Shown piece after piece: positions 29,238 to 62,900 of a stretch of 64,000 nucleotides of DNA (its first letter is position 1; every line of letters begins with the position of its first letter). Below the pieces are notes generated by a model. The model was not told where the DNA came from, did no database searches, and saw only the letters and a list, made by a program, of their open reading frames with translations. The position numbers and the translations under genes were made by a program. The stretch spans positions 62,001 to 126,000 of the IMG/VR virus record IMGVR_UViG_3300031884_000002; one strand, given 5' to 3'.

Positions 29238-30242
29238 TGTTATTATAAAATTAAAGAATTATTTCCAACTCTCCCATCTCAATTTATTATAAAAATGGAG
29301 CAAGATGTTATTTCAACGTATAAATCCATAAAATCTAATAAACATAAACTGGAGTTTCCGGCTATTAAAAAATCATTATCCATTCAACTTGACAAGCGTA
29401 TCTATAAGTGGATAGACAGGAACCATATAAAAATCACCACTCTAAATAAACAAGCAATCTGTTCTTTTAATGCTTATAATAAATTAAAAGAGATGGACTT
29501 TTCTAAATTAAAAGACCCAAAATTGTTTTATAAAAATAAACAATTTTACTTGTCCTTGATATTTGATGATAATAAACAATTTACTGATAATAACAAAGTA
29601 TTAGGAATTGACTTAGGATTAAAACGAATAGCAACATTAAGCAATGGAATTATATTCAAAGGAAACGAGTTTAACAAACATAAACGTAAAATTAGATGGA
29701 ATAAACGTAAATTACAATCCAAGAAAAATAATTCTCATTCTGCTCGTAAAAAATTAAAATCATTAAGAAGAAAAGAAACCAATTTTAGTAAAAATTACAT
29801 ACATAATTTAACAAAAAATATAATTATAAATAATAAAGAAAATATTTTAGTAATCGAAGATTTAAGTAAAATTAAAGTTAAGAACAAAGGAAAGAGATTT
29901 AACAATCGGTTAAGTCAATTACCATTTTTTAATTTTAGAACCATACTAACATACAAGGCACAACTATATGGAAAAATAGTTGAAACGGTTAACCCTGCTT
30001 ACACCAGTCAAATAGACCATAGAGGATTGACAAGTGGAACACGTAGAGGATGTAGATATTATGGTTCAGACGGAACAATGTTAGATGCCGATGTAAATGC
30101 GGCACTAAATATTGGAAATCGGTATAAAGATAATAAATCTTTAACCAAACACTCCATTTCGTGCTGTAAAGTACTTGATGGACAGGTGAACGTCAACTCA
30201 CCAATCGTCTCTATCAGTCAGAGGCAAGCACCGACCCTTTAG
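29238..30242 (+). pseudogene. tnpB: 5'-truncated TnpB (IS200/IS605 family)
   Basis: GIDLG, IEDL, YTSQ and DADVNAALNI. Homology to the 46660 TnpB extends upstream of the ATG at 29295 (CYYKIKELFPTLPSQ) to a TAA at 29235, so about 45 N-terminal aa are missing. Confidence 0.8.
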
Positions 30243-38065: not shown

Positions 38066-39178
38066 TTAAACATTCTTATTCCTCAATTCAGTCGATGATA
38101 TCGGCATATTAAAATTAGCCGCTTCATCTGATTTAATCATTAAATGACTGTATCTATCATCAATTTTAATCCCATTACGACCAAATACTAAAAACTTAAC
38201 ATTTTTACGAGTAAAAAAGTATTCTAAATCATCAACTGGAATGCCATATTTATCATCAAACACTCTAATAAACGTATCGGCACCCATTACAAATGTTATT
38301 TCACATTTAGGATTGTGTTTTTTAATTATATTTATTTTATCTATAACCAAAGAAGCATTAGTAATAATATATGTATTATCAGCAATAGAGTCCAATCTAT
38401 TTTTTATGTCAATTAAATCTATCGTTCCTTTATCTGCGTTTTTAATAGATAATTCAAGTAATACTGGATAATTTAATATTTTTTCAGATAATTCCTTAAT
38501 TTTACGATGCCCTTCGTGATAAGGATTAAAACTTCCTCCAAAAACAGCAATTCTTTCAATGTTGGATATTGATATATTGGAATAATAACCAATCTCTCCT
38601 TTAACTAATGAATATAATTTACCAGCATGTGCTATCTTTAATTCTCCAGTCATGCCCTTATCATCCACATAATTATATTCCCAAATATAATCATCTCCAC
38701 TCATAGAGTCAACAACTTTATTTAACAAATACAATATTCTATCGGATATGTATAAATCTTCTTCTACTCTTGTCATTACACCATACGGAATTGTAATTTT
38801 AAGACATACCGTAAAATAACTGATATGTATGGCAATATTAACTTTATGTAGTCGTCCAACTCGTTCTCCGTCAAAAGCAATAGAACTGGCGGCACCAATA
38901 CCAATAGATTTATCGATATCAATACCGGCAATACGACACTGCTGATATGATGCCAATGCTAATTTACGAGCGGCTAATGGACTGGAATATTCATCTATTT
39001 TAGTTCCTATAAAATTATCAAATATAGTTCTATCATACGGAACAATACATCCAACTATAGTTTTGGATGCTCCGCTAATTTTACAGTAATCCGCAATAAA
39101 TGATTGTCCTCCACCTGATATAGCAACAAATGCCTTGTAAGGAGAGTCGTTAATTTTATTTACAATTCCTTTATCCAT
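38066..39178 (-). CDS. CinA/PncC-like domain fused to a NadD-like nucleotidyltransferase
   Basis: N-terminal SGGG...GASK; C-terminal GGSFNPYHEGH, MGADT and ISSTELR. Confidence 0.7.
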   Translation of the reverse strand: MDKGIVNKINDSPYKAFVAISGGGQSFIADYCKISGASKTIVGCIVPYDRTIFDNFIGTKIDEYSSPLAARKLALASYQQCRIAGIDIDKSIGIGAASSIAFDGERVGRLHKVNIAIHISYFTVCLKITIPYGVMTRVEEDLYISDRILYLLNKVVDSMSGDDYIWEYNYVDDKGMTGELKIAHAGKLYSLVKGEIGYYSNISISNIERIAVFGGSFNPYHEGHRKIKELSEKILNYPVLLELSIKNADKGTIDLIDIKNRLDSIADNTYIITNASLVIDKINIIKKHNPKCEITFVMGADTFIRVFDDKYGIPVDDLEYFFTRKNVKFLVFGRNGIKIDDRYSHLMIKSDEAANFNMPISSTELRNKNV

Positions 39179-39428: not shown

Positions 39429-40097
39429 TCAATTTAAACTGGTAACTGTATATTCCGGTCTAATACCTTTATTCATATCAACAGACCCATCGGAATTGAG
39501 CCTAACATATCCAATATCATTTTTCATTTTAATGAATTGTTTAATAGCAATCTTCTCTCCCAATGTAGAAGCAGCCGATTGAACCAATTGTCCAATAGTA
39601 ATCTTATCATCCTTGACAAACTTTTGATTCATCAGACAATAATCAGATATATATTTTCCAATTTTACCCTCTATAATTTTATCAATAATATTTCCCGGTT
39701 TATTTTTATTAGTGGAAAATACATCCTGTTTAATATGGTTAATTTCTTCCGGTTTAATTTCATCTTTACTTATAGAAGTAGGAGTAATTGGAGTGGAACA
39801 TATATGCATACAAATGTCCTTGGCTAAATTGACAAATGTTTCATTTTTTGCCACGAAATCAGTTTGACAAGCCAATACAATCATTGCGCCAACTTTGTGA
39901 TTATGAATGTAAGAATATACAATGCCAGCATTGGCTACTCGGTTTGCCATATCAGTAGTATCGGTTTGCTTTTCTTTAATTAGAAAATCTATTGCTTTTT
40001 CTACATCTCCACCGGAGGTTTCCAATGCAACATTGATTTTATTATAAGGAGACATTGTAATGTCTCGGATATGTTTAATTTTTTCTGGTTGTGTCAT
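39429..40097 (-). CDS. tsf: translation elongation factor Ts (short form)
   Basis: UBA-like N-terminus, GIVYSYIH, CQTDFVAKN, KPGNIIDKIIEGK and QKFVKD. Confidence 0.93.
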   Translation of the reverse strand: MTQPEKIKHIRDITMSPYNKINVALETSGGDVEKAIDFLIKEKQTDTTDMANRVANAGIVYSYIHNHKVGAMIVLACQTDFVAKNETFVNLAKDICMHICSTPITPTSISKDEIKPEEINHIKQDVFSTNKNKPGNIIDKIIEGKIGKYISDYCLMNQKFVKDDKITIGQLVQSAASTLGEKIAIKQFIKMKNDIGYVRLNSDGSVDMNKGIRPEYTVTSLN

Positions 40098-40412: not shown

Positions 40413-41255
40413 TTATTTTTCATTTAATTTATATTCCATTTCGACAATTTCATTGACTCGTTTAACTATATCTTTCTTATTAGTTTGATATAGACCAGCC
40501 GATGAAAATGAAGTTAATTCTAAAAGCCAACAGTTGCCATCGGCATCTTCTGCGATATCAATGCAAAATATAGAGTCGGGATAATATCCAACTTTTAATA
40601 TTTCTTTACATTTTTCAGTTGCTTTGGGCGGCACACTTGGAATATAAGTTCGCTTTCCTTGATATTGGTAAGTCGATGCCGCAATTATTTCTCCTCCATT
40701 GTATTTACTACATACTAAACGATATTCCCCTGTAATTTGTTTAGGTGTAGATATAATCATTATATCGTTATCAATTGCACTGCTGGCAATAGAGTTTTCC
40801 CAGAATCTATCAAAATCCTGCATATCTATTAGTTGAGCCTGAAATGTTTTTTCGCCACTATCAGGCCGGATAAAAATCAATGCTTCTTTTCCAAATGTTC
40901 TATAGAAATAGAACTTATCTTCCTTTAAGTTTTTAAGAGTAGTAAACGCATTCGTATCATTGAATAAATGTTTTTGAAAATACGGATAGTATTTACTACA
41001 TAAATAATTATTCCAATTATTATAAGCAATAGGAAAACAACCTCTGGGTAAACGACTCGCTATATTTTTAGTCATTTGAATTGAACCTTGAACTATAACA
41101 CAATCATTCTCTTCAAATCCAGCCGGATTAAAGTCAAAATGATTATGCCGTCCAATGACAAAACAATATCGTCCAGATTCTTTAATAGCAGAAATTAAAT
41201 CATTATAATCTTCGCTATCAGTAAAGTTTTCTATAATATATTTCACTTTTTTCAT
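40413..41255 (-). CDS. ATP-grasp domain protein (R2K/DUF4343-like)
   Basis: FIRPDSGEKTF, EYRL and CIDIA...LLE..FSSAGLY. Confidence 0.75.
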   Translation of the reverse strand: MKKVKYIIENFTDSEDYNDLISAIKESGRYCFVIGRHNHFDFNPAGFEENDCVIVQGSIQMTKNIASRLPRGCFPIAYNNWNNYLCSKYYPYFQKHLFNDTNAFTTLKNLKEDKFYFYRTFGKEALIFIRPDSGEKTFQAQLIDMQDFDRFWENSIASSAIDNDIMIISTPKQITGEYRLVCSKYNGGEIIAASTYQYQGKRTYIPSVPPKATEKCKEILKVGYYPDSIFCIDIAEDADGNCWLLELTSFSSAGLYQTNKKDIVKRVNEIVEMEYKLNEK

Positions 41256-41337
41256 TATTATTAGTGTAATAAAAAATATGATACAAGTCAAGTAAAATTA
41301 TCAATACTTCCTATTTTGTTTTATATTTATATAATAT

Positions 41338-46659: not shown

Positions 46660-47799
46660 CTAAAGGGATAGGTGCTTGAACGGCCCCGAGGAGCGGGACT
46701 TATATTCGTATGGCGTATTGACTGACGCCTGCCCATAAGTCAGATTTGTGGTCTGTGATACGGGATGTTTGGACATTTTTCCAATGTTGATAGCAGCATT
46801 GATGTCCGAGTCATATATCATTCCATTTACTTTAGAGTAAAATCTACAACCTCTTCTTTCACCTTCGACTTTACCCGTTACCGAGTCTCGTTGTGATGTA
46901 TAGGAAGGGCAAACAAACAGAACAGTTTTACCTTGGTTCTGTGCCTTATAGGTTATTACTCTACGGAGTTCAAACATTGGAACTTGTGATATACTTCTTT
47001 TATTTTGGTATTTGTGTTTCTTTCTTTTTATGCTCTTGAGGTTTTCAAGACAAATTGTATCGGCTTCCGTTCGGAGAACGGCATTGGAAATTAGATGGGT
47101 TTGGTTCTTGTTCTTGTTTCGTTCTTTTCTTCGTAACGAATAACGAAGTTTCCTACGGGCACTCTTCGTTCCCTTGGATTTGAGTTTGTCTTTCAAGTAT
47201 CTCAATCTTCGTTTTTCACCGTTGAACTTCTTATCAATAATAAGTCGCCCATCCGAACAAGCAGCACTCCTACGGATGCCGATGTCCACTCCTAATGCCA
47301 ATCGTTGTTTGAGTTTTTCAACTTTGTTTTCAAAAGAGAAAGCGATACATACTTTATCATTATCCACATATATTAGAGGGTCTTGGTATGCGTATTTTTC
47401 CATCAACTCTTTCAGTCGTGGATAGACAACAAACTTGAAGGTCTGTCGTTTTCCTGTGGTCGTGATGCGAATAGAAAACTTATCTGGGATTGAGTAAAGT
47501 CGTTTATCCAATCTCATTGAGAGGTTCTTTTTTACAATGAGAGTTTTCTTATGCTTATTGGATTTCGCAGACCGATAGGAAGCAAGAACTTCTTGTTCTG
47601 CTTTGATTATTACTTGGGATGGGATTTCTGGATTTGACTTACGAACATTTTTATACACTTTGGAGTGAAGAACTACAAGAGAGTTCTTTGTTTCTGGTAG
47701 TTGTTCCTTGGAAGCAAGGTTGAATACAAACCTTTCGTATTCAAGCAACTTTTTCAGTTCTTGACAATCTCCTAAAAGTGTGGTATTGTAACTCAACAT
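46660..47799 (-). CDS. tnpB: TnpB RNA-guided nuclease (Zn-finger-less)
   Basis: GVDIG, LENL, YTSQ and DSDINAAINI. Confidence 0.92.
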   Translation of the reverse strand: MLSYNTTLLGDCQELKKLLEYERFVFNLASKEQLPETKNSLVVLHSKVYKNVRKSNPEIPSQVIIKAEQEVLASYRSAKSNKHKKTLIVKKNLSMRLDKRLYSIPDKFSIRITTTGKRQTFKFVVYPRLKELMEKYAYQDPLIYVDNDKVCIAFSFENKVEKLKQRLALGVDIGIRRSAACSDGRLIIDKKFNGEKRRLRYLKDKLKSKGTKSARRKLRYSLRRKERNKNKNQTHLISNAVLRTEADTICLENLKSIKRKKHKYQNKRSISQVPMFELRRVITYKAQNQGKTVLFVCPSYTSQRDSVTGKVEGERRGCRFYSKVNGMIYDSDINAAINIGKMSKHPVSQTTNLTYGQASVNTPYEYKSRSSGPFKHLSL

Positions 47800-48514: not shown

Positions 48515-48889
48515 ATGAGTGATTTCAAAGTAATAGAAAAAGCGTTTCCGAGCAGAGAACCTGAAAGTGGTATTCCACCAGAAACAAGATGGATTATTGT
48601 TGATGCCAACGACAAACTTTTGGATGATGCTGGTGGTTATGGATACAAAACCAAACAGAATGCTTTGAAAGCGGGTTGGTATAAGTTTCAAGGTGGTAAA
48701 AACAAGATTGACGAAATCAAATCGTGGTGGAAACAGAATAAAGCATTCTCACGAAGATTGAATAGATTTCAGGAAGATAACTTCAAAGAGATTGCTTACA
48801 ACCAAATCAACTTTGAAGAAGAGACAGTCAAAATTGCCAAAGAAATGAACATTGACGGGTTTGAAGTAAAGTTTTTGAAGTATTTATGA
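48515..48889 (+). CDS. hypothetical passenger protein coupled to tnpA
   Basis: Promoter at 48479-48506; LDDAGGYGYKT motif; ATGA overlap with tnpA. Confidence 0.7.
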   Translation: MSDFKVIEKAFPSREPESGIPPETRWIIVDANDKLLDDAGGYGYKTKQNALKAGWYKFQGGKNKIDEIKSWWKQNKAFSRRLNRFQEDNFKEIAYNQINFEEETVKIAKEMNIDGFEVKFLKYL

Positions 48890-49269
48890 GCCATAGCAAG
48901 TATCTGCTCCAATTCCATTTAGTTTTTTCAACTAAATATCGTAAAAAGATATTGTCGGGAGCATTGAGTGATGACTTGAAGCAGATTATGTATGATATTG
49001 CTAATGAGAAGGATATTATCATCAAAGCAATGGAGACGGACGATGACCACATACACCTAATGGTTGACTATCCTCCTACAAAGTCGGTATTAGAAATGAT
49101 GAATAACTTCAAGTCCATTTCAACATTTAGAATATACAAAAAACATAGAGCATTTCTCAAAGGGCATTATTGGAAGGAAAATACTCTATTCTCTGATGGA
49201 TACTTCGTTTGTTCCATTGGGGAAGCATCTCCAGAAACAATCAAAAAATACATACAAACTCAGGGATAA
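48886..49269 (+). CDS. tnpA: IS200-family Y1 HUH transposase
   Basis: HLVFSTKYR, DHIHL and YFVCSIG...IKKYIQTQ. Confidence 0.96.
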   Translation: MSHSKYLLQFHLVFSTKYRKKILSGALSDDLKQIMYDIANEKDIIIKAMETDDDHIHLMVDYPPTKSVLEMMNNFKSISTFRIYKKHRAFLKGHYWKENTLFSDGYFVCSIGEASPETIKKYIQTQG

Positions 49270-49938: not shown

Positions 49939-50424
49939 ATGAATAATTATAGCGATAAAATATTAGAAATAGCGACGAAAGCGCACGACGGTCAATATAG
50001 AAAATATGGATGTCGTTTACCATATATAACTCATCCGATTGCAGTTGCAAATATTTCAGAGGAAATCTTAAAAAACGAACTTAAAAGTTCAATTATGCTG
50101 GAATCTGAAATAAATGAAAATATTGAAATTATTCGCAGTATTGCATATCTTCACGATACAATTGAAGACACGAATCTTACAGAATTAGAATTGATTCGTG
50201 ATATTCAGCCGCTTACTTCACATTATCAATTTATAGTTAATAATGTAATGTATTTAACAAAATCAAATAAAGATTTTGATTTATTTATTTATTTGGATAA
50301 TATTAAATCTAACCTATTTTCCAGAATAGTTAAACTGGCGGATTTACAACATAATATGTCCGATTTGAAAGTTCAAAAGAAATTAGATTATTATAAACTT
50401 GTTAGATTTTATTTAAATAATTAA
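49939..50424 (+). CDS. HD-domain small alarmone hydrolase-like (RelA/SpoT hydrolase family)
   Basis: AHDGQYRK...PYITHP..VA, LHDTIED and VKLADLQHN. Confidence 0.85.
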   Translation: MNNYSDKILEIATKAHDGQYRKYGCRLPYITHPIAVANISEEILKNELKSSIMLESEINENIEIIRSIAYLHDTIEDTNLTELELIRDIQPLTSHYQFIVNNVMYLTKSNKDFDLFIYLDNIKSNLFSRIVKLADLQHNMSDLKVQKKLDYYKLVRFYLNN

Positions 50425-50681: not shown

Positions 50682-51429
50682 AAAGAGAAGTGTGATTTTG
50701 ATATTGACAATCAATCAGATTAGGATATAATGTTAAACATTATGAATATACATCTCCTTATAGGACAACGAAAAGAAAAATATGACGGAGAATATGCTCC
50801 TGAAGTATTGGAAGCGATGGATGAATATGGGTATAATGAAAATCCATTTTGTTGGTTAAATGAAAAATTAAAAGAATACCAAGATACTAATGAGTTTGAA
50901 GCAGTTAAAATCATAACTATTATGGTGCCGCATTCGGAAATTATGAAACAACTAATACCAAATGACAAACCAATTACTGCGGCAATAGTTAATCCTTGAC
51001 ATTTTATAAAACTCCTATATACTTCTATTACTATGAAAAAACTAAGTGCGATTATTTACTCTATATTCTGTATAGCCGTGGCAATGGTAGGTTATAACAT
51101 TAACGTTGCGGCAAATAGTAACTGGCCATTATTCTGGTCGATTATGGATTATATTTTCACTCCTATTACTATTGCTAAATGGATGATTTGTCAACAACTC
51201 AACATATCCATAATCAAACATACCTTTGCGTTTTTCTTCAATTAAACTTCTCCTTGACTTCAATTCTATAATCACTATAATGTGGTTATGACAAAAAAAA
51301 TAAAATTAAAGTTTAAAGGAAATAGATTTTCACAAGCATTTGAGTTTTTACGCAATTCATTACAAATCCTTTTTACTGGTAAAACTTCAATTGAAGTTAA
51401 CTTAGAATTAACAAAAAATATATAATACT

Positions 51430-52704
51430 ATGAGTAACTTAATTAAAGAAGCGAGATTGATCTTTTTGGAGCAAAACGACGAAACTAATTCGTATAAATG
51501 GTGGAATGCTCAACTATATGATGATGGAAAAGTAAAAATTCAATATGCGAGGGTCGGTGCGGAGCACCCTCAAAGCGGAGAATGGGATGGTGGCGAGAAA
51601 TATTTTAACAAGAAAGTGTCTGAAAAATTAAAAAAAGGCTATGTAGAACAAAAAACCATTGGGTCGGCAACTGCTTCATCCACTCCATCAGTTACGGTGA
51701 AAAACTCCGATTTATTAGAAATTGCCAAGAAACAAATTATTAAAACTTCCAATCCAATTCTTGAGCGTTTAATTAAACGCTTGGTAGATTCTAATATTCA
51801 TAAGATTACCAGTAGCACTCAAATTACATATAATTCAACTACTGGATTATTTAGTACACCACTCGGATTAATCGATAAATATGGAATAGATGAGGCCCGT
51901 TTAATATTAGCCGACATATCAACTTTAGTAAATCAAAACAGGTTTAATAATGAATTTAATAAACTAGTATTTAAATATCTTACTATAATACCTCAAAGTT
52001 TAGGTATGAAAAAAATCCAGCCAATAACTATAATTCCTAATAATGAGGCTTTACAAGAACAATTAGACATCTTAGATTCTTTAAGTGCGTCATATCAAGC
52101 ACTTCAACCAACTTCTCAATCTTTACCGCAAAATCAGACAACAGAGGAAGTATTTAAAGTTAATTTAGATATATTAAATGATAATAATGAAAGATCTAGG
52201 CTTAATAATTTTTTTGAAAAATCAAAGAAGTCAATGCATGGATATGATAATATTAGAGTAAAGGAAATGTATAAAGTTGATATTAACACAATGACTTCAA
52301 ACTTTTTACACACTGATCCAAACATAGTGGAAACCTTCCACGGAAGTTCAATGGCAAACGTTCTTTCAATATTGAAAAGTGGATTAAAAATTAATCCTCC
52401 ATCTACAGCAGCCATAGCCGGAAAATTATTCGATAATGGAATTTATGGGTCGGTTAATAGTACAAAAAGTTTAGGATATTGTTTAAACAAATGGTCTCAA
52501 GGTGGAGTAGGTGATGCAGCATTTTTATTTATATGCTCATTCGCAATGGGTAAAACATATACCACTACGGCATATGGATGTAAACGTCCGACTAATTATG
52601 ATAGTATTTGGGCCAAGGCTTCTTCAAATAGATTGAAAAACGATGAATTAATTGTTTATTCTGAAAATAGAGTAAAAATCAATTATTTATTAGAGTGTAA
52701 ATAA
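51430..52704 (+). CDS. poly(ADP-ribose) polymerase-like protein (WGR + helical + catalytic domains)
   Basis: WGR-like YARVG; YLTIIP helical domain; FHGS, GKLFDNGIY, KSLGY and NDELIVY (H-Y-E triad). Confidence 0.88.
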   Translation: MSNLIKEARLIFLEQNDETNSYKWWNAQLYDDGKVKIQYARVGAEHPQSGEWDGGEKYFNKKVSEKLKKGYVEQKTIGSATASSTPSVTVKNSDLLEIAKKQIIKTSNPILERLIKRLVDSNIHKITSSTQITYNSTTGLFSTPLGLIDKYGIDEARLILADISTLVNQNRFNNEFNKLVFKYLTIIPQSLGMKKIQPITIIPNNEALQEQLDILDSLSASYQALQPTSQSLPQNQTTEEVFKVNLDILNDNNERSRLNNFFEKSKKSMHGYDNIRVKEMYKVDINTMTSNFLHTDPNIVETFHGSSMANVLSILKSGLKINPPSTAAIAGKLFDNGIYGSVNSTKSLGYCLNKWSQGGVGDAAFLFICSFAMGKTYTTTAYGCKRPTNYDSIWAKASSNRLKNDELIVYSENRVKINYLLECK

Positions 52705-52753: not shown

Positions 52754-53614
52754 TTGAAGGATATGAATAAAAAACAATTTACTAAAGATACATCACCATT
52801 TCCATTATTAAATAATAAAGAATGGCTATATCAGAAATATTTAGTTGAAAAATTAAATACAGAAAAAATTGCCAAGTTAGTAGGCTGTGCGAACGGAGCA
52901 ACGATTAGTAGAAATCTTAAAAAATTTAATATTCCGATGCGAAGTTATAGTGAACGTAAACGCAATGCTAATGTTAATTATTTAAAACTAAATATGCCAG
53001 TAATCAATGGATCTCTTCTAGGAGATGCGTTTATTACTAAACAACGTATAAAAAATGGAAGTTGTGGAATATCCAAACGAAATATCCATTATAATCATCT
53101 ATTATATTTTGCCTCTAAAATATTGACAAAAATCCCAGAATCAAGAATTTTTGGTCCATATGAATCTTCTACAAACCTAACTCCAAATGGAAAGCCAGTA
53201 TATTTTCTAAATACATTTAAATTACCAGAAATAGCCGAATTGCGAAATAAATGGTATCCGAATGGAATCAAGATTATACCGAAAGATATTGTTTTAACAA
53301 AGGAAAGTTTATTACATTGGTTTTTGGATGATGGATATTCATATTTTTACAAACAGCGGTACAAAACAACCGAGTATAAATATACACGAGTATTTTTTTG
53401 CACAAATAATTTTACAAAAAAAGATTTAGAATGGTTATGTGTAAAATTAAAGAACGAATTTAATCTTAAATTTACACTATCAAAGAAAGGAATTCGAAAA
53501 GATGGAACTCAGTCATATTTATTAAAACTAAGTGATACTCAAGTAGAAGAATTTTTTAAACTTATAGGGAAATGTCCCGTAAAAGAGTTAGAATATAAAT
53601 GGAAAATTGTTTAA
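52754..53614 (+). CDS. LAGLIDADG homing endonuclease
   Basis: GSLLGDA and HWFLDDG; WYPNG.K..P; CTNNF. Confidence 0.88.
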   Translation: MKDMNKKQFTKDTSPFPLLNNKEWLYQKYLVEKLNTEKIAKLVGCANGATISRNLKKFNIPMRSYSERKRNANVNYLKLNMPVINGSLLGDAFITKQRIKNGSCGISKRNIHYNHLLYFASKILTKIPESRIFGPYESSTNLTPNGKPVYFLNTFKLPEIAELRNKWYPNGIKIIPKDIVLTKESLLHWFLDDGYSYFYKQRYKTTEYKYTRVFFCTNNFTKKDLEWLCVKLKNEFNLKFTLSKKGIRKDGTQSYLLKLSDTQVEEFFKLIGKCPVKELEYKWKIV

Positions 53615-54977
53615 TACTTGACTTTTTATAAATCTTCGATATACTCATAAGATGAAAATACAAGTTACTCGAACATTTGAGCCGATTACTAAAATAGTAG
53701 AGGATTGTCACGAATGTCCCTATTTTTGGAAAGATAATGACGGACAAATGACACTGCAAATGTGCGCCCATCCTAAGTTTGGAACGGGTGGATATGATAA
53801 TGTTATTCCGGACCTTAGAAGGCAATGGGAGAAAGATTATAAAAATAAAATATCAAATAGATGTCCGTATCGAATACTTCAATCTACACTAATGATAGCA
53901 AGTTAAAATTATGAAATCTATTTATGATAAACTATATCGTGGACCTATCTTTAAAAGATGGTTCCGCAATTGGTATGTTTTAGAAAAGGGAAAGGGATAT
54001 AGTACCAATTATACATATGGTAATTGGTATGATGCTACTTTTAATGAGGGCTGTGTATTTGGTCCTTTTTGGAGTGAAAATAGTGTAAAATGTGCCGCAA
54101 TGGAAGCAAATAACCAAAATTATCACAGTATGTTTTCATAATTATGAAATGTTTATTTGGACATAAATTAGGAAAAATAGACGGCGACTTCCAATATTGT
54201 ATTAAATGTGGAGAAAAAAGAGTAAAATGGATATGAAATCATTCAATGAATATTTTAAGGGTAAAATCGATATTTATTTCGACGAGGCTATTATAAATGA
54301 AGAAATATATAATAAACTTCGTGCTGAGTTTATATCACAAGGAATATCAATGGCAGCATCAACGGTTGCTTTAAGTGGATTGGAGTTTCCATATGCTATT
54401 CGTGACGCATTACAATTAGAAATAAATGAGTTAAAAAACAAATTATGAGTACAAGTTATAATACTTATGTTGGACCTTATATCAAAATATATAATCCTGA
54501 GTTATACACCACGATTGTTATTAAAGGATGTGCTTGGAATAAATGTGAAAAATATAAAATATTGTCACATAGCAATTATTGTTCTATGTGTGGAAATCCT
54601 ATCATTGAAGTGGAAGTTCCATCTATAACAAAAAAGATTAAACTTAATGTATATACCGAATTAAATGAAAAACTATATAATCCATATACAGAATATTCTC
54701 CTAAACATTTAAAAGATTATGATATTTATATTCCAAATATCAAAGGATATGGATACCATCCTACAGACGAAACTTATGAGTTTGAAATGATTGATGGTGA
54801 TATTCATAATGTATTATGTAATTTTAATATGTCAATGGAAGATGAAATCATCATATTAAAAAAGAAGTTTGGAATACCAAATGTCAAAACTCAATATGGC
54901 GTACTTGGATATTTAACTTGACTTCCAATCTATCATCTATATACTTCTTAACGTAACAATTAACAAATAATAAAATT

Positions 54978-55592
54978 ATGTGTGATAAAAACTCAAATCT
55001 AAACAAGGCAATCTTGACTCAAGTTCAAGAGTTTGCCAATAACTCAACCACGTTCTCAATCCACGATACTACTGTGGCATTGCGAAATAAGGCAAATGCT
55101 GGCAATCTTAATCTGCCAGAGTTTGAAAATCAAATTGGACAATATAAATATAACATTCCTCATAAGTCGGTGAAAACTGCATTTTTGGAATTGTTGTCCG
55201 ATGGCATTTTCGCCGAAATTGGACTTGATGTTAGTAGCCAATACAACGGAGTATATAATGAATACACCGCTACTGTGACTACTCCTACCCAACCTCCAGT
55301 CTCCATCGTAAGTTCGCCTGTGGCAAATGTTACAATTACAAATCCTCCTTTTACACCTACATCTCAATCGGTTACGGTAAATAAGAAATCCAAACAAGAA
55401 GTAGAATCTAAGGTGTCTAATTATTTGGATAGTCATACAGGGAAACAAGTTTCTATCGAACAAATCCGTGCCGCCATCAAATGTAATGGCTGGACTTGTG
55501 CCGAAATCTTGGATATTGTTAAAACTCAATATCCTAATAATACCCAACTCGGAACGAATTATTATCCTTCTAAGGAATTGGTTGTTGCTTAA
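54978..55592 (+). CDS. hypothetical two-domain protein with a Pro/Thr linker
   Basis: ORF behind the promoter at 54918-54945. Confidence 0.65.
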   Translation: MCDKNSNLNKAILTQVQEFANNSTTFSIHDTTVALRNKANAGNLNLPEFENQIGQYKYNIPHKSVKTAFLELLSDGIFAEIGLDVSSQYNGVYNEYTATVTTPTQPPVSIVSSPVANVTITNPPFTPTSQSVTVNKKSKQEVESKVSNYLDSHTGKQVSIEQIRAAIKCNGWTCAEILDIVKTQYPNNTQLGTNYYPSKELVVA

Positions 55593-55774: not shown

Positions 55775-57042
55775 GTGAATGCTCCCAACCTCTAAAGAGG
55801 TTGGGCTTCTATCCTAACTTGCGTTAGAAAAAGAGTCCATTCCGACTCTTAAAATATTTCTTGCAGCATTCAAATCCCTACCAATGTTAAGATTACAAAT
55901 AGGACATTTGTGTTGTCTTTCTGACAACTCTTTCTTAACAATGGTTCCGCATCCCGAGCATATTTGGGTCGTGTATCGTGGGTCAACATTTACTACTTCA
56001 CAGCCAGCTTCTACCGCTTTACTATGGAGCATTTGTCTAAATGCTGCCCAACCCGAGTCCAATATGCTTCTATTCAACGCTCGCCAATTGTCATTCAACA
56101 TTTGGCTTGGTCGAATATCTTCCACACAAATATGAGAATACTCGTTCACTAGTTTCTTGCTCAACTTGTGTAGGAAATCTTTTCGTTGGTTCTTCACTCT
56201 ACAATGGAGTTTAACCAATTCTCTCTTGGTCTTTATCTTCGTCTTGTCATCCTTCGGTTTAAGTTTCAGTTTGGAATACTTACCTTGGACTTTGGAAAGT
56301 TTCTCCTGTGATTGTTTAAGAAAATGAGGATTAGGAATAGTGGTTCCATCCGAACAGGTCACAAAGTCAATACATCCAACATCAATCCCAACTGCTCGTT
56401 TCCATTTTCGTTTTTCAATCTTCACTTCAACTTCACACGAGAAAATAGCATACCAATGTGTGCCTTCACGCTTAATGGTCAAGGTCTTTACCTTGCCTTC
56501 CATTGGTCGGTGGAAGTTAATACGAACGTCTCCAATCTTGGACATCCACATTTTCTTCTTTCCTATCTTAAATCCTGTCTGTGGAAAGGTGAAGGAGTCA
56601 TACCGGTCATAGGACTTAAAGCGTGGGAAACCTGCTTTTCCACTCTTATCCTTCAATCTGCGGAAGAACCCAAGATAGGCAAGGTCAAGTCGGGCAGATA
56701 CGTTTTGGAGGACTTGCGAATGGACTGGAGTTTTCAGTTCCATATCCTTAATTATTTTACAACAATCAAAGTGAGTTAAAGTTTTCTTGGTCTTCTTGTA
56801 GTGGTCGTTTCGCTTCTCAAGGAGTTGGTTATAAACGTAGCGACAAGTATTCAGCGTCTCTTGGAGACGGATAGCACTGCCTCCTTTGGGAGACAATTTG
56901 AACTTGTAATTGCGTTTTACTTTCATTCTATAACATACATATCATCCACTTTAAGGAAAATGTTATTTTATTTCTGTTTCCTTAATATGGTCGTCATTCA
57001 TCCCCTTGGCTAAAGCCGAAGGGGCTTTCTGACTCCAAAAAT
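55775..57042 (-). mobile_element. IS1341-like element (tnpB only)
   Basis: Minus-strand left end TTAC|...AAAG-hairpin ccccttcggctttagccaagggg; right end GAAG-hairpin cccaacctctttagaggttggg...TCAC. Confidence 0.88.
55814..56926 (-). CDS. tnpB: canonical TnpB with HTH and Zn ribbon
   Basis: YKFKLSP, GFPRFK, GIDVG, VEDI, CSGC...CPIC and RDLNAARNI. Confidence 0.96.
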   Translation of the reverse strand: MKVKRNYKFKLSPKGGSAIRLQETLNTCRYVYNQLLEKRNDHYKKTKKTLTHFDCCKIIKDMELKTPVHSQVLQNVSARLDLAYLGFFRRLKDKSGKAGFPRFKSYDRYDSFTFPQTGFKIGKKKMWMSKIGDVRINFHRPMEGKVKTLTIKREGTHWYAIFSCEVEVKIEKRKWKRAVGIDVGCIDFVTCSDGTTIPNPHFLKQSQEKLSKVQGKYSKLKLKPKDDKTKIKTKRELVKLHCRVKNQRKDFLHKLSKKLVNEYSHICVEDIRPSQMLNDNWRALNRSILDSGWAAFRQMLHSKAVEAGCEVVNVDPRYTTQICSGCGTIVKKELSERQHKCPICNLNIGRDLNAARNILRVGMDSFSNAS

Positions 57043-58532: not shown

Positions 58533-59483
58533 ATGAATGATACATCAAAATTAAACCAAAGTCAAGAGAAAGAAAAAATATGGGAAGAAAAAAGTTATAT
58601 AGAACCAGAGAAGAATTACTCGAACAGCAACGTGCCAGAGGAAATAGATACTATAATAAACACAAAAGAAAAATCAATATTAAAAATATGCGACGATACT
58701 ATAACAAAAAAAAGTGGAATATACAAAATAATAAATAAAACAAATAACAAATACTATATAGGAAGTGCTAAAAATATTAGAATTAGAATTAAATATGGTC
58801 ATTTATGGGCACTAAAATCTAAAAAACACAGAAACAGACATCTTCAAAGAGCATGGAACAAATTTGGAGAAGATAATTTTTATATAATGATTATAGAATA
58901 TGTTCCTATAGAATTATTAAAAATTGTAGAACAAAGATATTTAGATATAGCAAAATCAGAAATAGATAATGTATATAACATACAGTTTATAGCCGATAGA
59001 TTAGAAGTAACTGATTATATGCGAGAATGTGTTAGAGCATCAAATAAAAACAGAGTATGGACAAAGGAATCTCGTAAAAAATTAAGCAAAGTTCATACTG
59101 GGTATAGACATACAGATGAAGCCAAACAAAAAATGAGCGATGCCAATAGAGGTAAAATTATTTCTTTGGAACATAGATTAGCAGTTGGAATTGCGACAAG
59201 AGAACGGATCAAAAAATATGGATCTCCAATGAAAGGAACTCACATGTCCAAGGAAACAAAACAAAAACTTAGTAAATCAAGAACTGGAAAATATAGAGGG
59301 AAGGAAAATCACGCATTTGATAATACTATTTATAATTTTATCCATAACAAAACTGGCGAAATATTTGTAGGAACTAGACACGAATTAAAATTAAAAGCAA
59401 ATCTTTGTATTGATAGTTTATATAAACTAATAAATAATAAAATATTTACTTCCAAAGGTTGGGCATTAATATATCCTATTTAA
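58533..59483 (+). CDS. GIY-YIG homing endonuclease with NUMOD3 repeats
   Basis: SGIYKIINKTNNKYYIGSA; HTDEAKQKMS; N-terminus paralogous to the 11628 gene. Confidence 0.92.
   Translation: MNDTSKLNQSQEKEKIWEEKSYIEPEKNYSNSNVPEEIDTIINTKEKSILKICDDTITKKSGIYKIINKTNNKYYIGSAKNIRIRIKYGHLWALKSKKHRNRHLQRAWNKFGEDNFYIMIIEYVPIELLKIVEQRYLDIAKSEIDNVYNIQFIADRLEVTDYMRECVRASNKNRVWTKESRKKLSKVHTGYRHTDEAKQKMSDANRGKIISLEHRLAVGIATRERIKKYGSPMKGTHMSKETKQKLSKSRTGKYRGKENHAFDNTIYNFIHNKTGEIFVGTRHELKLKANLCIDSLYKLINNKIFTSKGWALIYPI
58580..58738 (+). CDS. overlapping basic peptide MGRKK-2 (52 aa)
   Basis: Same 47-nt offset from the endonuclease ATG as the peptide at 11675. Confidence 0.75.
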   Translation: MGRKKLYRTREELLEQQRARGNRYYNKHKRKINIKNMRRYYNKKKWNIQNNK

Positions 59484-59901: not shown

Positions 59902-62900
59902 ATAATTTCTTCAATAGTAATTTTATATTTTTTAGTCGTATTAAAAGGTAGTAATCCATAATATTTCATTTCCACAAATCCTTTTTCTCCATACCCAGAA
60001 ATTAAAGTATTAGGACTATGTACAATATCAAAATAATATAACCCCGTATAAAAAAAAGGTTCTTCAGTAGAAGGTATATTATGAGAAACTGAAGTTAGCA
60101 TAATGTCAAATGATACTGGTTTAAACACAATAGGATGTTCTATTGGTATTTCTTTATACATTGGTTCTAATTTAGATATAACTTTATCATATGGAACATA
60201 TTCTATAGTATTAACATTAGAAATAACATTTACCAAAAAATGTTTATTATCATTTCCGGTATTAGTATCGCCTATAATTCCTTTGCGTTTTATACCCAAA
60301 ATACTATTGTATTCTATACTATCGTTTATTTTTAATTCATTTATTTTCATAATATTGTCAAGTCCAGAGTATATTCCTATGAGTTACTAACCAAATCATG
60401 TATTCAGTATCAGTATCATATATCAATTTTTCCAGCCGATTGGTTTCTCCATATAATTCTTCATATTTTTTCTTGGCGTCATCAGGATTATTATATTGAA
60501 GAGGAAATCCTTTGGATATATCAAATGGAGGATATGAGTCATCTAATTTTTTCTGCATTTCGGCTCTGCCGGTTTTAGCCCAATTATATATTTTAATAAT
60601 TGCTTCTTTTTCAGATTTAAGATTATCCCATCCTATTACATTTAAAGCATCTTCGCCTTCAATATAATCAATTATACCGGCAAATAAAACATTCTCATAA
60701 ATTGTGTCAAGATCTAACCATCTATTACTTATTGACTTCTTAACCCACTTATTTCTAGGGTTAAGCCAACACCTAATTCCATATGATATATCTCGATAGA
60801 AATAAGGACATAAAATAGTATATTTATCTTGTAATTTATTCCAGAGTTTCATTTTAATCGTTTCAGTAATTCTTGTTTTAATTCTAATACTTTATTATCA
60901 TATATTCTAAATCCACCTGAATTATTACAGGCATCTTTCGCAGAATAATCTACCCATCTTGTATATAAATCTAATAATTGTTCGTTAGTTACCAATTCGT
61001 TGACTACCCGCTTTATACCATTATAACCCATGGATTTTTGGAATATTCTATCACTTTTAATCTTTTTCTGTCTTTTTAAGTTTTCTAATGCCAAATCCTT
61101 CATCACTTCAATTGGAAGTTCGTATTTTTTACATCGGTGAGGAGCATCATTATCATTTACTAAAATCCATTTAGTTTTATATTTTCCCCATCGGACATGA
61201 GTAGTTCCACATCCTTTACATTTAGGATTTTCAATATAGTGGGGATATGAATAATAATCATCAACCCACATACTATCTGCGTCCATATCGGCTATATCAC
61301 CCATTTTTTAAGTTTAACATATTTGACTCAAATGTCAATTTAATTTGACATGTAGATTAAACCTGCTATATTGAGAATATGAAATTAACCGGCAAACTTT
61401 TAGAAAAATATTTGGAGAATCCAAATGGAATGGACGAAGAAGTGAGAGAAGCATTGAAATTGCCAGATAATAGATATTATTCCATTGTTACATGGAGTAT
61501 AAATGAAGCATCAATTGGAAATGTATATGTGTCTAGGGTAGAACGAGTTGTTAAAAATAAAAAAGTTTCAAAATCAGACCAGAAAAGTAATCCTTGACTT
61601 ACAATCTTAAAACTGTATAATATGTGGCTATGTGGAAAAGAATAATAACCGATATGCCGCCTGAAAATACAAGAATTATTATATCAGATGGAGCAACCAT
61701 TGCCATTTGCCGTTATATATTGGGAAATGAGTGTATTCATTGGTTGTTTGATTCTGAATCATTTTCAGACATTAAAATAATTTATTGGATGGAATTGCCA
61801 AAACTTCCACCTGAAATTAAACAAATATCGGCGGAAATATAATTTATGTATAACCTAATTAGCACTACTAAACCAAATGCAAAAAAAGAATATGATTGTA
61901 TTTGGTGTTCTGAAAAAATCCTAAAAGGAGAACAACACGTAAAAGAAGTCGGTGAATATCAAGGAGATTTTCAAAGTAATCGCTGGCACCAAGAATGTCA
62001 TAACGCCGCTCAATTATATTTCGAGGAAAGTAATGAAAATGAGTTCACTCCACATAATAATGAACGTGGTTCAAAAAAAGAAAAAATCCTAGATGTAAAA
62101 CCAGTATATATAAATAAAATGATAGATAGATTGACTAAAATCGTATCATTTGAAATGAATCCTAATGAATCTAAAAGATATTTCAATTTAGTAGATAGAC
62201 ATAGAGCAGTTTGTAACGCATATTCATTTAAAATATTATTCTCACCAAATGGAATAGGAACCGGAGTTCAAATTATTTGTGGAACTTGTGATGTTAAATG
62301 GGATATAACCGATTATGATAGTTGGTAATTTATGAATATTGAAACCATAAAAATAAGCGATGACGTTTCAATTGAAATATGTCATGGACACTGGACCAAA
62401 ATAATATACGAAATACCAGAAGATTACGAAGACCAAAGTTGTGAGTTTCCAATTTCAATTGAAGAACTTAGAATTTTAAAAAAATATTTAAACTCCAGAA
62501 CCGATTTATGAAATTAGTATTAACATACGATATATCGGACCACTGTACTTATTCATATCCAAATCATATTCCATTTGAATATGAATCAAAAGAAAAGGCG
62601 GAATATGATTTATATGAAGAGTGGCAACGAATTGGAAGAGAATTAGTCATGTATTCCAAATGGGAAGAAAAGTGTCCCAGCACATCTTCTAAACAAGAAA
62701 AATGGAAAGCGTGGGATAAAATGAAACCCAACGTTAATTTAAATATTAAATTGGGAACAATTAAAGAATTGGACGTTAATGATTTTACAATATATCAATC
62801 TTTGTCCAATAAACCACGAGAATACAATGAGCCAAAAATCATGACCTTGGATGAATGGTTTAATTATTATAAAGAATAATATGACAGAAAAAGATACAAA

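What the first reader, a model, noticed from the sequence alone, without database searches (positions are those of the whole stretch)
51430..52704. Phage-encoded WGR-PARP with an intact H-Y-E triad
Seen: a WGR-like domain, a helical regulatory region and PARP catalytic motifs. Known: this architecture matches DNA-break-activated PARPs of eukaryotes and scattered bacteria, and differs from T4 Alt/Mod mono-ADP-ribosyltransferases. Inference: poly-ADP-ribosylation for host takeover, DNA repair or anti-defence.
Basis: partly seen in the sequence, partly recalled or inferred. Interest (0 to 1): 0.6.

Follow-up and report, generated by a model that had tools for sequence, protein, structure and literature searches.

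The report
Jumbo-phage WGR-type PARP enzyme gene
A giant freshwater bacteriophage carries an intact gene for a PARP1/2-like ADP-ribosylating enzyme with all its catalytic residues; such phage PARPs are already catalogued from sequence, but nobody has shown what they do.

Summary
Window 51430-52704(+) is one 424-aa ORF with three domains: WGR (aa 1-78), helical PARP_reg/HD (about 94-228) and PARP ART (about 240-424). The catalytic triad H304-Y339-E406 is intact and invariant in 121 homologues.

The gene lies in a 353.8-kb, CheckV-complete, T4-like jumbo-phage genome from lake water.

The predicted fold matches the PARP1 and PARP2 WGR-CAT chains over the full length (Z 23-24). Residues that separate poly- from mono-ADP-ribosylating H-Y-E PARPs are retained (PARP1 H826, K903, M890 equivalents). 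The loop before the catalytic Glu is short, as in the PAR-forming C. difficile PARP.

The kind is not new. PHROG 23333, GenBank annotations (XacN1, Cellulophaga phi4:1) and four in-silico surveys (2005-2022) already list phage PARPs. I found no biochemistry on them.

New here:
- The gene is conserved across a large clade of uncultured jumbo phages (645 hits).
- It is linked in 19 of 23 loci to a tandem winged-helix protein.
- The same genome has two ARH3-like hydrolases, a TARG1/DarG-like macrodomain, NAMPT and an NAD-dependent ligase, but no PARG.

The biological role is inferred, not shown. Verdict: new member of a known kind, moderate interest.

The parts
51430..52704 (+). PARP gene, 424 aa (P0001): WGR - helical regulatory domain - ART
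   Evidence: ORF. Pfam PARP and PARP_reg above their cutoffs. PHROG 23333 matched over the full length, E 2.4e-46. Fold Z 23-24 to PARP1, PARP2 and PARP4.
51430..51663 (+). WGR domain (aa 1-78); the motif reads Y39-A40-R41-V42-G43 at 51544-51558
   Evidence: Pfam WGR is sub-threshold at 15.8 bits. The family profile aligns to the PARP2 WGR. Model pLDDT is about 90, with four strands and a helix. R41, V42 and G43 are conserved in 120-121 of 121 sequences. N20, K23, W25, K66 and Y71 are conserved.
51709..52113 (+). Helical (PARP_reg / HD) domain, about aa 94-228
   Evidence: Pfam PARP_reg at 37.7 bits. Helices 93-103, 109-129, 150-168, 174-186 and 205-225 in the model. Aligned with the PARP4, PARP1 and PARP2 HD.
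52147..52701 (+). ART catalytic domain, about aa 240-424. H304 at 52339-52341, Y339 at 52444-52446, E406 at 52645-52647. Acceptor-site equivalents: H270 at 52237-52239, L333, K346.
   Evidence: Alignment to PARP1. Invariance in 121 sequences. Codons checked.
51254..51281 (+). Sigma-70-like promoter TTGACT-N16-TATAAT, 11 of 12 matches, the nearest strong promoter upstream of the PARP
   Evidence: This is a consensus match only; transcription has not been shown.
51288..51425 (+). 45-aa ORF that starts 6 nt after the -10 hexamer. Its TAA stop lies 4 nt before the PARP ATG, so translational coupling is possible.
   Evidence: No homologue was found in related loci, so whether it is a real gene is uncertain.
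52754..53614 (+). Free-standing LAGLIDADG homing endonuclease inserted directly downstream of the PARP
   Evidence: Pfam LAGLIDADG_2, E 1.4e-25. Absent from all 23 related loci.
54978..55592 (+). 204-aa tandem winged-helix protein with a Pro/Thr-rich linker, the conserved downstream neighbour of the PARP
   Evidence: A same-strand homologue lies downstream of the PARP in 19 of 23 related loci. Alignment A2. Model pLDDT 76.8. Both domains match only winged-helix folds, Z 7-7.8.
54445..54921 (+). 158-aa Cys-rich (zinc-ribbon-like) protein between the PARP and the winged-helix gene
   Evidence: A homologue was detected in only 3 related loci. No family hit. Membership in the module is doubtful.

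Best explanation
The gene encodes an active ADP-ribosyltransferase of the PARP1/2/3 type (WGR-HD-ART) and is a conserved gene of a clade of freshwater T4-like jumbo phages.

Proposed mechanism:
1. The WGR domain binds DNA nicks or ends.
2. That binding loosens the autoinhibitory helical domain and opens the NAD+ site.
3. The H304/Y339/E406 centre then transfers ADP-ribose from NAD+ onto the enzyme itself and onto nearby proteins (possibly onto DNA ends).
4. The product is most likely short or long chains, because the acceptor-site residues needed for elongation are kept.

In the infected cell this would mark or regulate DNA ends and nicks made during host-DNA breakdown and during recombination-driven phage replication. 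The linked tandem winged-helix protein is the most likely cofactor or substrate.

The phage also supplies NAD+ recycling (NAMPT and an NMNAT-like protein) and candidate erasers (two ARH3-like hydrolases and a macrodomain).

Shown here: architecture, fold, residue conservation, gene linkage and genome content. Inferred: catalysis, DNA dependence, polymer formation, targets and biological role.
For: Domains and fold.

Catalytic and NAD-site residues H304, G305, Y339, K346, S347, Y350 and E406 are invariant in 121 homologues that share only 53-68% identity, which indicates purifying selection on catalysis.

Acceptor-site determinants of PAR versus MAR listed in PMC10711553 are kept:
- PARP1 H826 corresponds to H270 (121 of 121).
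- K903 corresponds to K346 (121 of 121).
- M890 corresponds to M or L at position 333.

The three WGR segments tied to DNA-dependent activity in bacterial PARPs (PMC5966428) are conserved.

Bacterial WGR-reg-cat PARPs from C. difficile and H. aurantiacus make PAR in a reaction supplied with activated DNA (PMC5966428). CdPARP has the same short Tyr-to-Glu spacing: 69 residues, against 64-69 in this family.

A sigma-70-like promoter sits directly in front of the gene in many relatives.

Genome context:
- NAD-dependent DNA ligase.
- NAMPT.
- An NMNAT-like protein.
- Two ARH3-like hydrolases.
- A macrodomain.
- A second complete relative, G001, also has two ARH matches and a macrodomain.

The winged-helix neighbour is conserved in 19 of 23 loci.
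Against: - No enzyme assay exists for any phage PARP in the papers I could search.
- H-Y-E is not sufficient for polymerisation; PARP3 and PARP4 are mono-transferases.
- The loop before the catalytic Glu is about 25-35 residues shorter than in PARP1 and PARP2. PARP1 Y986 is replaced by N404, and the closest catalytic-domain structure by rmsd is the mono-transferase PARP4.
- This copy has Y-A-R in place of W-G-R.
- No PARG of either type is in the genome.
- The ARH, macrodomain and NAMPT genes lie tens to hundreds of kb away. They are also common phage counter-defence genes, and the macrodomain resembles the DarG macrodomain. Their link to the PARP rests on co-occurrence in two related complete genomes only.
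- The complex prediction with the winged-helix protein gave no verdict.
- No RNA data were found.
Confidence: 0.6

Rival explanations
1. The enzyme is a DNA-break-activated mono-ADP-ribosyltransferase, like PARP3 or PARP4, not a polymerase. It may cap DNA 5'-phosphate ends or tag a few proteins with single ADP-ribose units.
For: The catalytic domain superposes best on PARP4 (Z 23.8, rmsd 2.7 A over 274 residues). It has the same overall length as the PARP4 HD+ART. The acceptor loop is short and PARP1 Y986 is N404. The genome has ARH- and macrodomain-type erasers, which remove terminal ADP-ribose, but no PARG.
Against: The residues whose loss explains the mono-activity of PARP3 and PARP4 are invariant here: PARP1 H826 and K903. 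CdPARP has the same short loop and still gives anti-PAR signal and a mobility shift.
Confidence: 0.25
2. It is a host-takeover enzyme. It ADP-ribosylates host proteins such as RNA polymerase or translation factors early in infection, as T4 Alt and Mod do. The WGR would serve only to place it on the nucleoid.
For: Early-type sigma-70-like promoters lie in front of the gene in the window and in relatives. Iyer et al. 2021 proposed this for jumbo-phage PARPs (PMC7824862).
Against: Keeping the autoinhibitory HD and the WGR residues argues for ligand-gated rather than constitutive activity. No host target can be inferred, and the host is unknown.
Confidence: 0.2
3. It is a counter-defence enzyme. 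It inactivates a host immune nuclease or sensor by ADP-ribosylation, or shields phage DNA ends from host exonucleases or restriction.
For: The neighbourhood in relatives is rich in DNA methyltransferases, PNK3P, RNA ligase and dCMP deaminase, which are conflict and repair genes. A precedent exists for an ART-fold anti-CRISPR, AcrIF11 (PMC8120803).
Against: No padloc or anti-defence family evidence was obtained. The gene is widely conserved with stable length and synteny, which is unlike fast-turnover anti-defence genes.
Confidence: 0.15
4. It is an inactive or purely structural relic of a transferred cellular PARP.
For: This copy has a degenerate WGR motif (Y-A-R) and mobile elements all round it: a LAGLIDADG endonuclease, IS200 and TnpB genes.
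Against: The ORF is full-length. Every catalytic residue is invariant across 121 diverged homologues. Y is the commonest first residue of the WGR motif in bacterial PARPs.
Confidence: 0.03

Closest known systems
Human PARP2 and PARP1 WGR-HD-ART module (PDB 7aeo, 6x0l, 4dqy, 4opx)
   Same: Same three-domain order. The family profile aligns end to end with PARP2 at E 5e-32. The model aligns over residues 1-424 at Z 23.0-23.7. The H-Y-E triad and the equivalents of G863, K903, S904, Y907 and H826 are conserved.
   Different: Only about 18-23% identical. It has no zinc fingers, BRCT domain or N-terminal tail. The loop before the catalytic Glu is about 25-35 residues shorter. PARP1 Y986 is N404. 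The WGR motif of this copy is Y-A-R.
Bacterial WGR-PARP_reg-PARP_cat PARPs (C. difficile CD160 CdPARP, Herpetosiphon aurantiacus HaPARP; PMC5966428)
   Same: Same minimal three-domain architecture and similar size (47-52 kDa against about 48 kDa). Same short Tyr-to-Glu spacing (69 in CdPARP against 67 here). Tyr is common at the first WGR position. These enzymes make PAR in vitro.
   Different: These are cellular genes, usually paired with a PARG; this phage has none. The nearest cellular homologue found here, in an Armatimonadota MAG, is only 35-37% identical. I did not align CdPARP or HaPARP directly.
Annotated phage PARPs: PHROG 23333, Xanthomonas phage XacN1 BBA65562.1, Xoo-sp13, Klebsiella phages FBKp34/KP13-16/05F01, Cellulophaga phi4:1
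   Same: Same family and full-length architecture: PHROG E 2.4e-46, and tblastn at 25-32% identity over 97-100% of the length. All are in large or jumbo phages.
   Different: They are distant, at 32% identity or less. Their flanking genes differ: vWA in XacN1, DNA ligase in phi4:1. None has the tandem winged-helix neighbour.
Human PARP4 catalytic domain (PDB 8sx1, 8sx2)
   Same: Best local superposition of HD+ART (Z 23.8, rmsd 2.7 A). Similar loop lengths.
   Different: PARP4 lacks the K903 and H826 equivalents and is a mono-transferase. The phage enzyme keeps both.
T4 Alt, ModA and ModB
   Same: Phage-encoded NAD+-dependent ADP-ribosyltransferases.
   Different: They belong to a different ART clade (R-S-E, cholera-toxin-like; PMC8120803). 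They have no WGR or HD, act on arginine, and are mono-transferases.

Membership tests
PARP family, PARP1/2/3-like clade (WGR-HD-ART) | PARP-type ART fold with the H-Y-E triad | tested here: met
   Pfam PF00644 at 75 bits. H304, Y339 and E406 align to PARP1 H862, Y896 and E988 and are invariant in 121 sequences. Fold Z 21-24.
PARP family, PARP1/2/3-like clade (WGR-HD-ART) | Helical regulatory domain (PARP_reg/HD) directly N-terminal of the ART | tested here: met
   PF02877 at 37.7 bits against a cutoff of 26.8. Helical bundle at aa 93-225 in the model. Aligned with the PARP4, PARP1 and PARP2 HD.
PARP family, PARP1/2/3-like clade (WGR-HD-ART) | WGR domain | tested here: met
   This copy is sub-threshold on Pfam (15.8 against 22 bits) and reads Y-A-R-V-G. 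The family consensus is W-G-R-V-G. The profile aligns to the PARP2 WGR. The model aligns from residue 1 with the PARP1 and PARP2 WGR-CAT chains.
PARP family, PARP1/2/3-like clade (WGR-HD-ART) | Activation by DNA breaks | not testable with these tools
   Only indirect evidence: the WGR segments N20-W25, R41-G43 and K66-Y71 are conserved, and the HD is retained.
Poly(ADP-ribose)-forming PARPs (as opposed to mono-transferases) | Functional acceptor site: equivalents of PARP1 H826, K903 and M890 (PMC10711553) | tested here: met
   H270 in 121 of 121; K346 in 121 of 121; position 333 is M in 97 and L in 24. Caveats: the acceptor loop is shortened and Y986 is N404.
Poly(ADP-ribose)-forming PARPs (as opposed to mono-transferases) | Polymer actually produced | not testable with these tools
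   Needs an in vitro assay. The precedent is bacterial CdPARP and HaPARP only.
Complete reversible PAR system (writer plus PARG eraser) | PARG encoded with the PARP | tested here: not met
   Neither PF05028 nor PF10021 matched in the 353.8-kb genome. The PF05028 control rang nowhere, so only the bacterial-type PARG result is a firm negative. Two ARH3-like proteins and one macrodomain are present instead.
PHROG 23333 (phage 'polymerase', i.e. PARP) | Full-length match to the family profile | tested here: met
   E 2.4e-46, 159.5 bits, aa 9-423 against profile positions 5-382 of 383.
T4 Alt/Mod-type ARTs | R-S-E active-site triad, no WGR or HD | tested here: not met
   The triad is H-Y-E and WGR and HD domains are present. 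The clade definition is taken from PMC8120803.

The most novel reading that the evidence does not exclude
This clade of jumbo phages runs its own PARG-independent ADP-ribose signalling cycle on DNA ends inside a bacterium. A break-gated PARP writer works with a dedicated tandem winged-helix partner, ARH3-like and macrodomain erasers remove the mark, and NAMPT regenerates NAD+. This would be a prokaryotic-virus counterpart of the eukaryotic DNA-damage PAR response, and possibly related to its evolutionary source.
Probability: 0.15. Interest if true: 0.75.

Novelty: new member of a known kind. Interest (0 to 1): 0.42.

Why it matters
[quoted passage not shown] Phage PARPs have been listed in surveys since 2005, but I found no assay of one.

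This locus shows three things:
- The enzyme is a conserved, selected gene of a large clade of environmental jumbo phages. It is not a sporadic pick-up.
- It keeps the residues needed for chain elongation.
- It has a specific candidate partner gene.

That gives a concrete system for asking what a DNA-break-gated ADP-ribosyltransferase does during phage infection, and whether PAR signalling can work without PARG.

It does not change current classification.

Tried and rejected
- Megablast of 8 kb around the gene against GenBank phages found no match.
- A single-protein scan of IMG/VR found nothing; the alignment-based scan then found 16 loci.
- Complex prediction with PARP plus the 204-aa winged-helix protein scored 0.00 and returned no verdict. 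It is not evidence either way.
- The winged-helix protein has no significant Pfam or PDB sequence match. There was only a sub-threshold BrxL_N hit, and Foldseek E-values were 0.02 or worse.
- The 158-aa Cys-rich neighbour, the HD hydrolase and the small upstream ORFs are not conserved next to the PARP, so I dropped them as partners.
- The winged-helix neighbour is not found beside the PARPs of XacN1, KP13-16 or Cellulophaga phi4:1, so I rejected the linkage as a general phage-PARP feature.
- No PARG was found. The eukaryotic-type PARG search had no positive control, so that result is weak.
- No RNA run holds the locus, so expression could not be checked and read laying was not used.
- I did not run the large representative-protein search, because the family was not left open.
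- The NMNAT-like assignment of window 38066-39178 stays weak. All NCBIfam hits are far below their cutoffs and there was no PDB hit.
Full report
**1. Observation**

The ORF listing finds one ORF at exactly 51430..52704 on the + strand, 424 aa, ATG to TAA.

Pfam results:
- PARP catalytic domain: aa 254-399, E 7.6e-21, 75 bits, cutoff 26.7.
- PARP_reg: aa 131-220, E 2.5e-9, 37.7 bits, cutoff 26.8.
- WGR: aa 12-75, E 0.015, 15.8 bits, below the cutoff of 22.

phmmer against PDB sequences puts the human PARP1 catalytic fragment first, at E 6e-17. The motif correspondences are:
- FHGS aligns with WHGS (H862).
- GIYGS aligns with GIYFA (Y896).
- NDELIVY aligns with YNEYIVY (E988).

The triad is therefore H304, Y339 and E406, at codons 52339-41, 52444-46 and 52645-47.

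**2. The WGR domain is real, though this copy's motif is unusual**

The word-based protein search returned 645 homologues. The best 120 are 53-68% identical and 395-444 aa long.

In the 121-sequence alignment A1 the family consensus reads W-G-R-V-G (W39 in 117 of 121, G40 in 110 of 121, R41 in 121 of 121). The window's copy reads Y-A-R-V-G. That explains its weak Pfam score.

Garcia-Saura et al. report that Tyr is the commonest first residue of this motif in bacterial PARPs (PMC5966428). The substitution is therefore not a sign of decay.

A profile of A1 aligns from position 7 to 419 with the human PARP2 WGR-HD-ART at E 5e-32. This includes the NNKY and WGRVG segments.

**3. Fold**

AlphaFold2 with A1 gives mean pLDDT 82.1 and pTM 0.62. 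The layout is:
- A beta-rich N-terminal domain, aa 1-78, pLDDT about 90.
- A disordered linker, aa 80-93.
- A helical domain, aa 93-225.
- A second linker, aa 229-239.
- The ART domain, aa 244-424.

Foldseek's best matches are the WGR-CAT chains of PARP1 and PARP2 bound to DNA breaks (E about 1e-22, roughly 485 aligned columns).

VIA-align results:
- PARP4 HD+ART: Z 23.8, rmsd 2.7 A over 274 residues.
- PARP1 4opx_C and 4dqy_C: Z 23.7, spanning model residues 1-424.
- PARP2 7aeo_A: Z 23.0.

The three-domain architecture is that of the PARP1/2/3 clade.

**4. Poly or mono?**

H-Y-E is necessary but not sufficient. PARP3 and PARP4 carry it and are mono-transferases.

Frigon and Pascal (PMC10711553) attribute this to loss of acceptor-site residues: PARP1 H826, K903 and M890, and the L985/Y986 region. 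The mapping through the alignment, with counts, is:
- H826 corresponds to H270, 121 of 121.
- K903 corresponds to K346, 121 of 121.
- M890 corresponds to position 333, M in 97 and L in 24. The window has L.
- Y986 corresponds to N404, 117 of 121.
- N987 corresponds to D405.

The stretch between the conserved S-V/I-W-A-K block and the catalytic Glu is about 25-35 residues shorter than in PARP1 and PARP2. The Tyr-to-Glu spacing is 64-69 residues in the family, against 92 in PARP1.

CdPARP has its triad at H322, Y359 and E428, so its spacing is 69. In a reaction supplied with NAD+ and activated DNA it gives anti-PAR signal and a mobility shift. That signal is rucaparib-sensitive and is removed by PARG.

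The short loop therefore does not exclude polymer formation. My judgement is that oligo- or poly-ADP-ribosylation is more likely than strict mono-transfer, but this remains inference.

**5. Genome and habitat**

The window is bases 62001-126000 of a 353,772-bp IMG/VR virus record that CheckV rates 100% complete. GC content is about 30%.

The window encodes:
- rIIA, rIIB, an NAD-dependent DNA ligase, an RNA ligase and several homing endonucleases.
- An EF-Ts-like protein, an R2K ATP-grasp protein and an NMNAT-like protein.

It is a T4-like jumbo phage.

The DNA is held by lake-water and freshwater metagenome runs. No RNA run holds it.

**6. Distribution**

Many homologues lie on contigs of 100-364 kb. 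Sixteen IMG/VR contigs carry the gene.

Cultured-phage homologues are distant, at 25-32% identity. They are in Xanthomonas XacN1 and Xoo-sp13, Stenotrophomonas CM1 and RAS14, three Klebsiella phages, and Cellulophaga phi4:1 and phi17:2. Several are already annotated as poly(ADP-ribose) polymerase.

Only two hits came from 185,579 species genomes, both Armatimonadota MAGs at 35-37% identity. This scan is pattern-limited. One of them, L028, sits among cellular genes: a DtxR-like repressor, an Nramp transporter and a helicase, at GC 60%. Genuine bacterial relatives therefore exist but are far off.

**7. Context of the gene**

Synteny in relatives:
- Upstream lie a DUF2828/DUF7788 protein and two N6/N4 DNA methyltransferases.
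- Downstream lie PNK3P, a PKD protein, dCMP deaminase and RNA ligase.

In the window the region is broken up by mobile elements:
- IS200 TnpA.
- Two TnpB genes.
- A LAGLIDADG endonuclease at 52754-53614, directly after the PARP. It is absent from all relatives.

One neighbour is consistently kept. The 204-aa protein at 54978-55592 has a same-strand homologue downstream of the PARP in 18 of 23 loci by tblastn, and in one more by profile search. This holds down to 40% PARP identity.

This protein has no Pfam or PDB sequence match. Its model (pLDDT 76.8) has two compact domains joined by a Pro/Thr-rich linker. Each domain matches only winged-helix domains (Fur, PerR, PurR, Z-alpha, ScpB, cullin WHB, ORC) at Z 7-7.8 and rmsd 2.2-2.8 A. 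The Z values are modest, but the fold class is uniform across the list.

It is not found beside the XacN1, KP13-16 or phi4:1 PARPs. A complex prediction gave no verdict.

I regard this protein as the best candidate for a cofactor or substrate. That rests on linkage alone.

**8. NAD and ADP-ribose genes elsewhere in the genome**

- Two ADP-ribosylglycohydrolase-family proteins (140 and 130 bits). Their best solved relatives are ARH3 (E 6e-17 and 1.6e-10).
- A 156-aa macrodomain protein just outside the window. It is nearest to TARG1/OARD1 and to the DarG macrodomain.
- A NAMPT: E 1.5e-97 to solved NAMPTs, and NCBIfam 470 bits against a cutoff of 405.
- No bacterial-type PARG. The eukaryotic-type PARG search was negative but had no positive control.
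- The other complete relative examined, G001 at 365 kb, also has two ARH matches and a macrodomain.

These genes are compatible with a writer, eraser and recycling set. They are also ordinary phage counter-defence equipment, so the association is suggestive only.

**9. Expression signals**

A TTGACT-N16-TATAAT site lies at 51254-51281. Sites matching at least 11 of 12 positions are enriched in the window: 27 observed against 5.8 +/- 3.0 in shuffles.

In at least nine relatives such a site ends 9 nt before the PARP ATG, with no Shine-Dalgarno sequence between them. This suggests early, host-RNA-polymerase-driven, near-leaderless transcripts.

In the window a 45-aa ORF is interposed between the promoter and the PARP. 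Its stop codon lies 4 nt before the PARP ATG.

**10. What is known**

- Otto et al. 2005 (PMC1266365) surveys the PARP-like transferase family. It came up in the search for PARP, bacteriophage and WGR, but I did not open it.
- Perina et al. 2014 (PMC4245714) list PARP genes in phages Aeh1 and Cellulophaga phi4:1, with conserved H-Y-E.
- Iyer et al. 2021 (PMC7824862) note PARPs in a few jumbo phages, citing BBA65562.1. This is the XacN1 protein found here as hit H1.
- Iyer et al. 2022 (PMC9503650) count the PARP family among the most frequent viral ARTs.
- PHROG 23333 already holds the family.

I found no biochemical or genetic study of a phage PARP.

**11. Verdict**

The finding is real and correctly identified. 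The kind is already known from sequence, so this is a new member of a known kind.

What this analysis adds:
- The enzyme's conservation across a large uncultured jumbo-phage clade.
- Retention of the elongation determinants.
- The clade-specific winged-helix partner.
- The PARG-less eraser and NAD-salvage context.

The mechanism (break-gated ADP-ribosylation, probably polymeric, acting at DNA ends during infection) follows from homology and conservation. It awaits an enzyme assay.

Noticed in passing
Whole window; examples at 50704-50731, 50996-51023, 51254-51281, 61345, 63530 (+) and 1151, 4062, 9898, 13816, 16648, 22383, 25519, 43350 (-): Near-consensus sigma-70 promoters (at least 11 of 12 matches) are about five-fold enriched: 27 against 5.8 +/- 3.0 in shuffles. 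In 15 of the 27, an ATG opening an ORF of 40 aa or more lies only 6-10 nt after the -10 hexamer, with no Shine-Dalgarno. This suggests widespread leaderless or near-leaderless early mRNAs in this phage clade. The same geometry precedes the PARP gene in at least nine relatives.
   Followed up: partly
window 46660-47799(-), 48886-49269(+), 55814-56926(-), 29295-30242(+): The window has a heavy load of IS200/IS605-type elements. There are two TnpB (OrfB_IS605 / Cas12f-like TNB) genes, one IS200 Y1 transposase and a further transposase-like ORF. This is unusual for a lytic-type T4-like genome, and the elements interrupt the synteny seen in relatives.
   Followed up: partly
window 52754-53614(+), 11628-12812(+), 58533-59483(+): There are several free-standing homing endonucleases: a LAGLIDADG directly after the PARP, and GIY-YIG/NUMOD3 types elsewhere. 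The LAGLIDADG is absent from all 23 related loci.
   Followed up: partly
window 49939-50424(+): A 161-aa HD-domain protein resembles the hydrolase domain of RelA/SpoT (NCBIfam spoT_relA E 2.6e-10; PHROG 990). It may be a phage small alarmone hydrolase. It is not conserved next to the PARP in relatives.
   Followed up: no
window 39429-40097(-), 40413-41291(-), 38066-39178(-), 27056-29002(-): Four notable genes lie in this part of the window: an EF-Ts-like protein (92 bits), an R2K-clade ATP-grasp protein, a protein with a weak C-terminal NMN/NaMN adenylyltransferase-like domain, and a full-length NAD-dependent (LigA-type) DNA ligase. Together with the NAMPT at G000:C1:281008-281748, this phage invests heavily in NAD+-dependent chemistry.
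   Followed up: partly
G000:C1:5290-6051(-), 8664-9662(-), 61123-61470(-), outside the window; G001:C1:263874-265781: The genome has two ARH3-like ADP-ribosylhydrolases and a TARG1/DarG-like macrodomain. In the complete relative G001, the two ARH matches lie in tandem within one 688-aa open frame, which may be a fusion.
   Followed up: partly
L024:978 onward (+2 frame) and L024:4289 onward: One relative carries two copies or fragments of the winged-helix partner gene, one upstream and one directly downstream of its PARP.
   Followed up: no
L004, L006, L007 (upstream of the PARP in relatives): A conserved DUF2828/DUF7788 protein of about 500 aa and a pair of divergently oriented N6/N4 DNA methyltransferases lie 2-5 kb upstream of the PARP in relatives. 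In XacN1 a vWA-domain protein directly follows the PARP. There may be a recurrent PARP-vWA association, but I did not test it.
   Followed up: no
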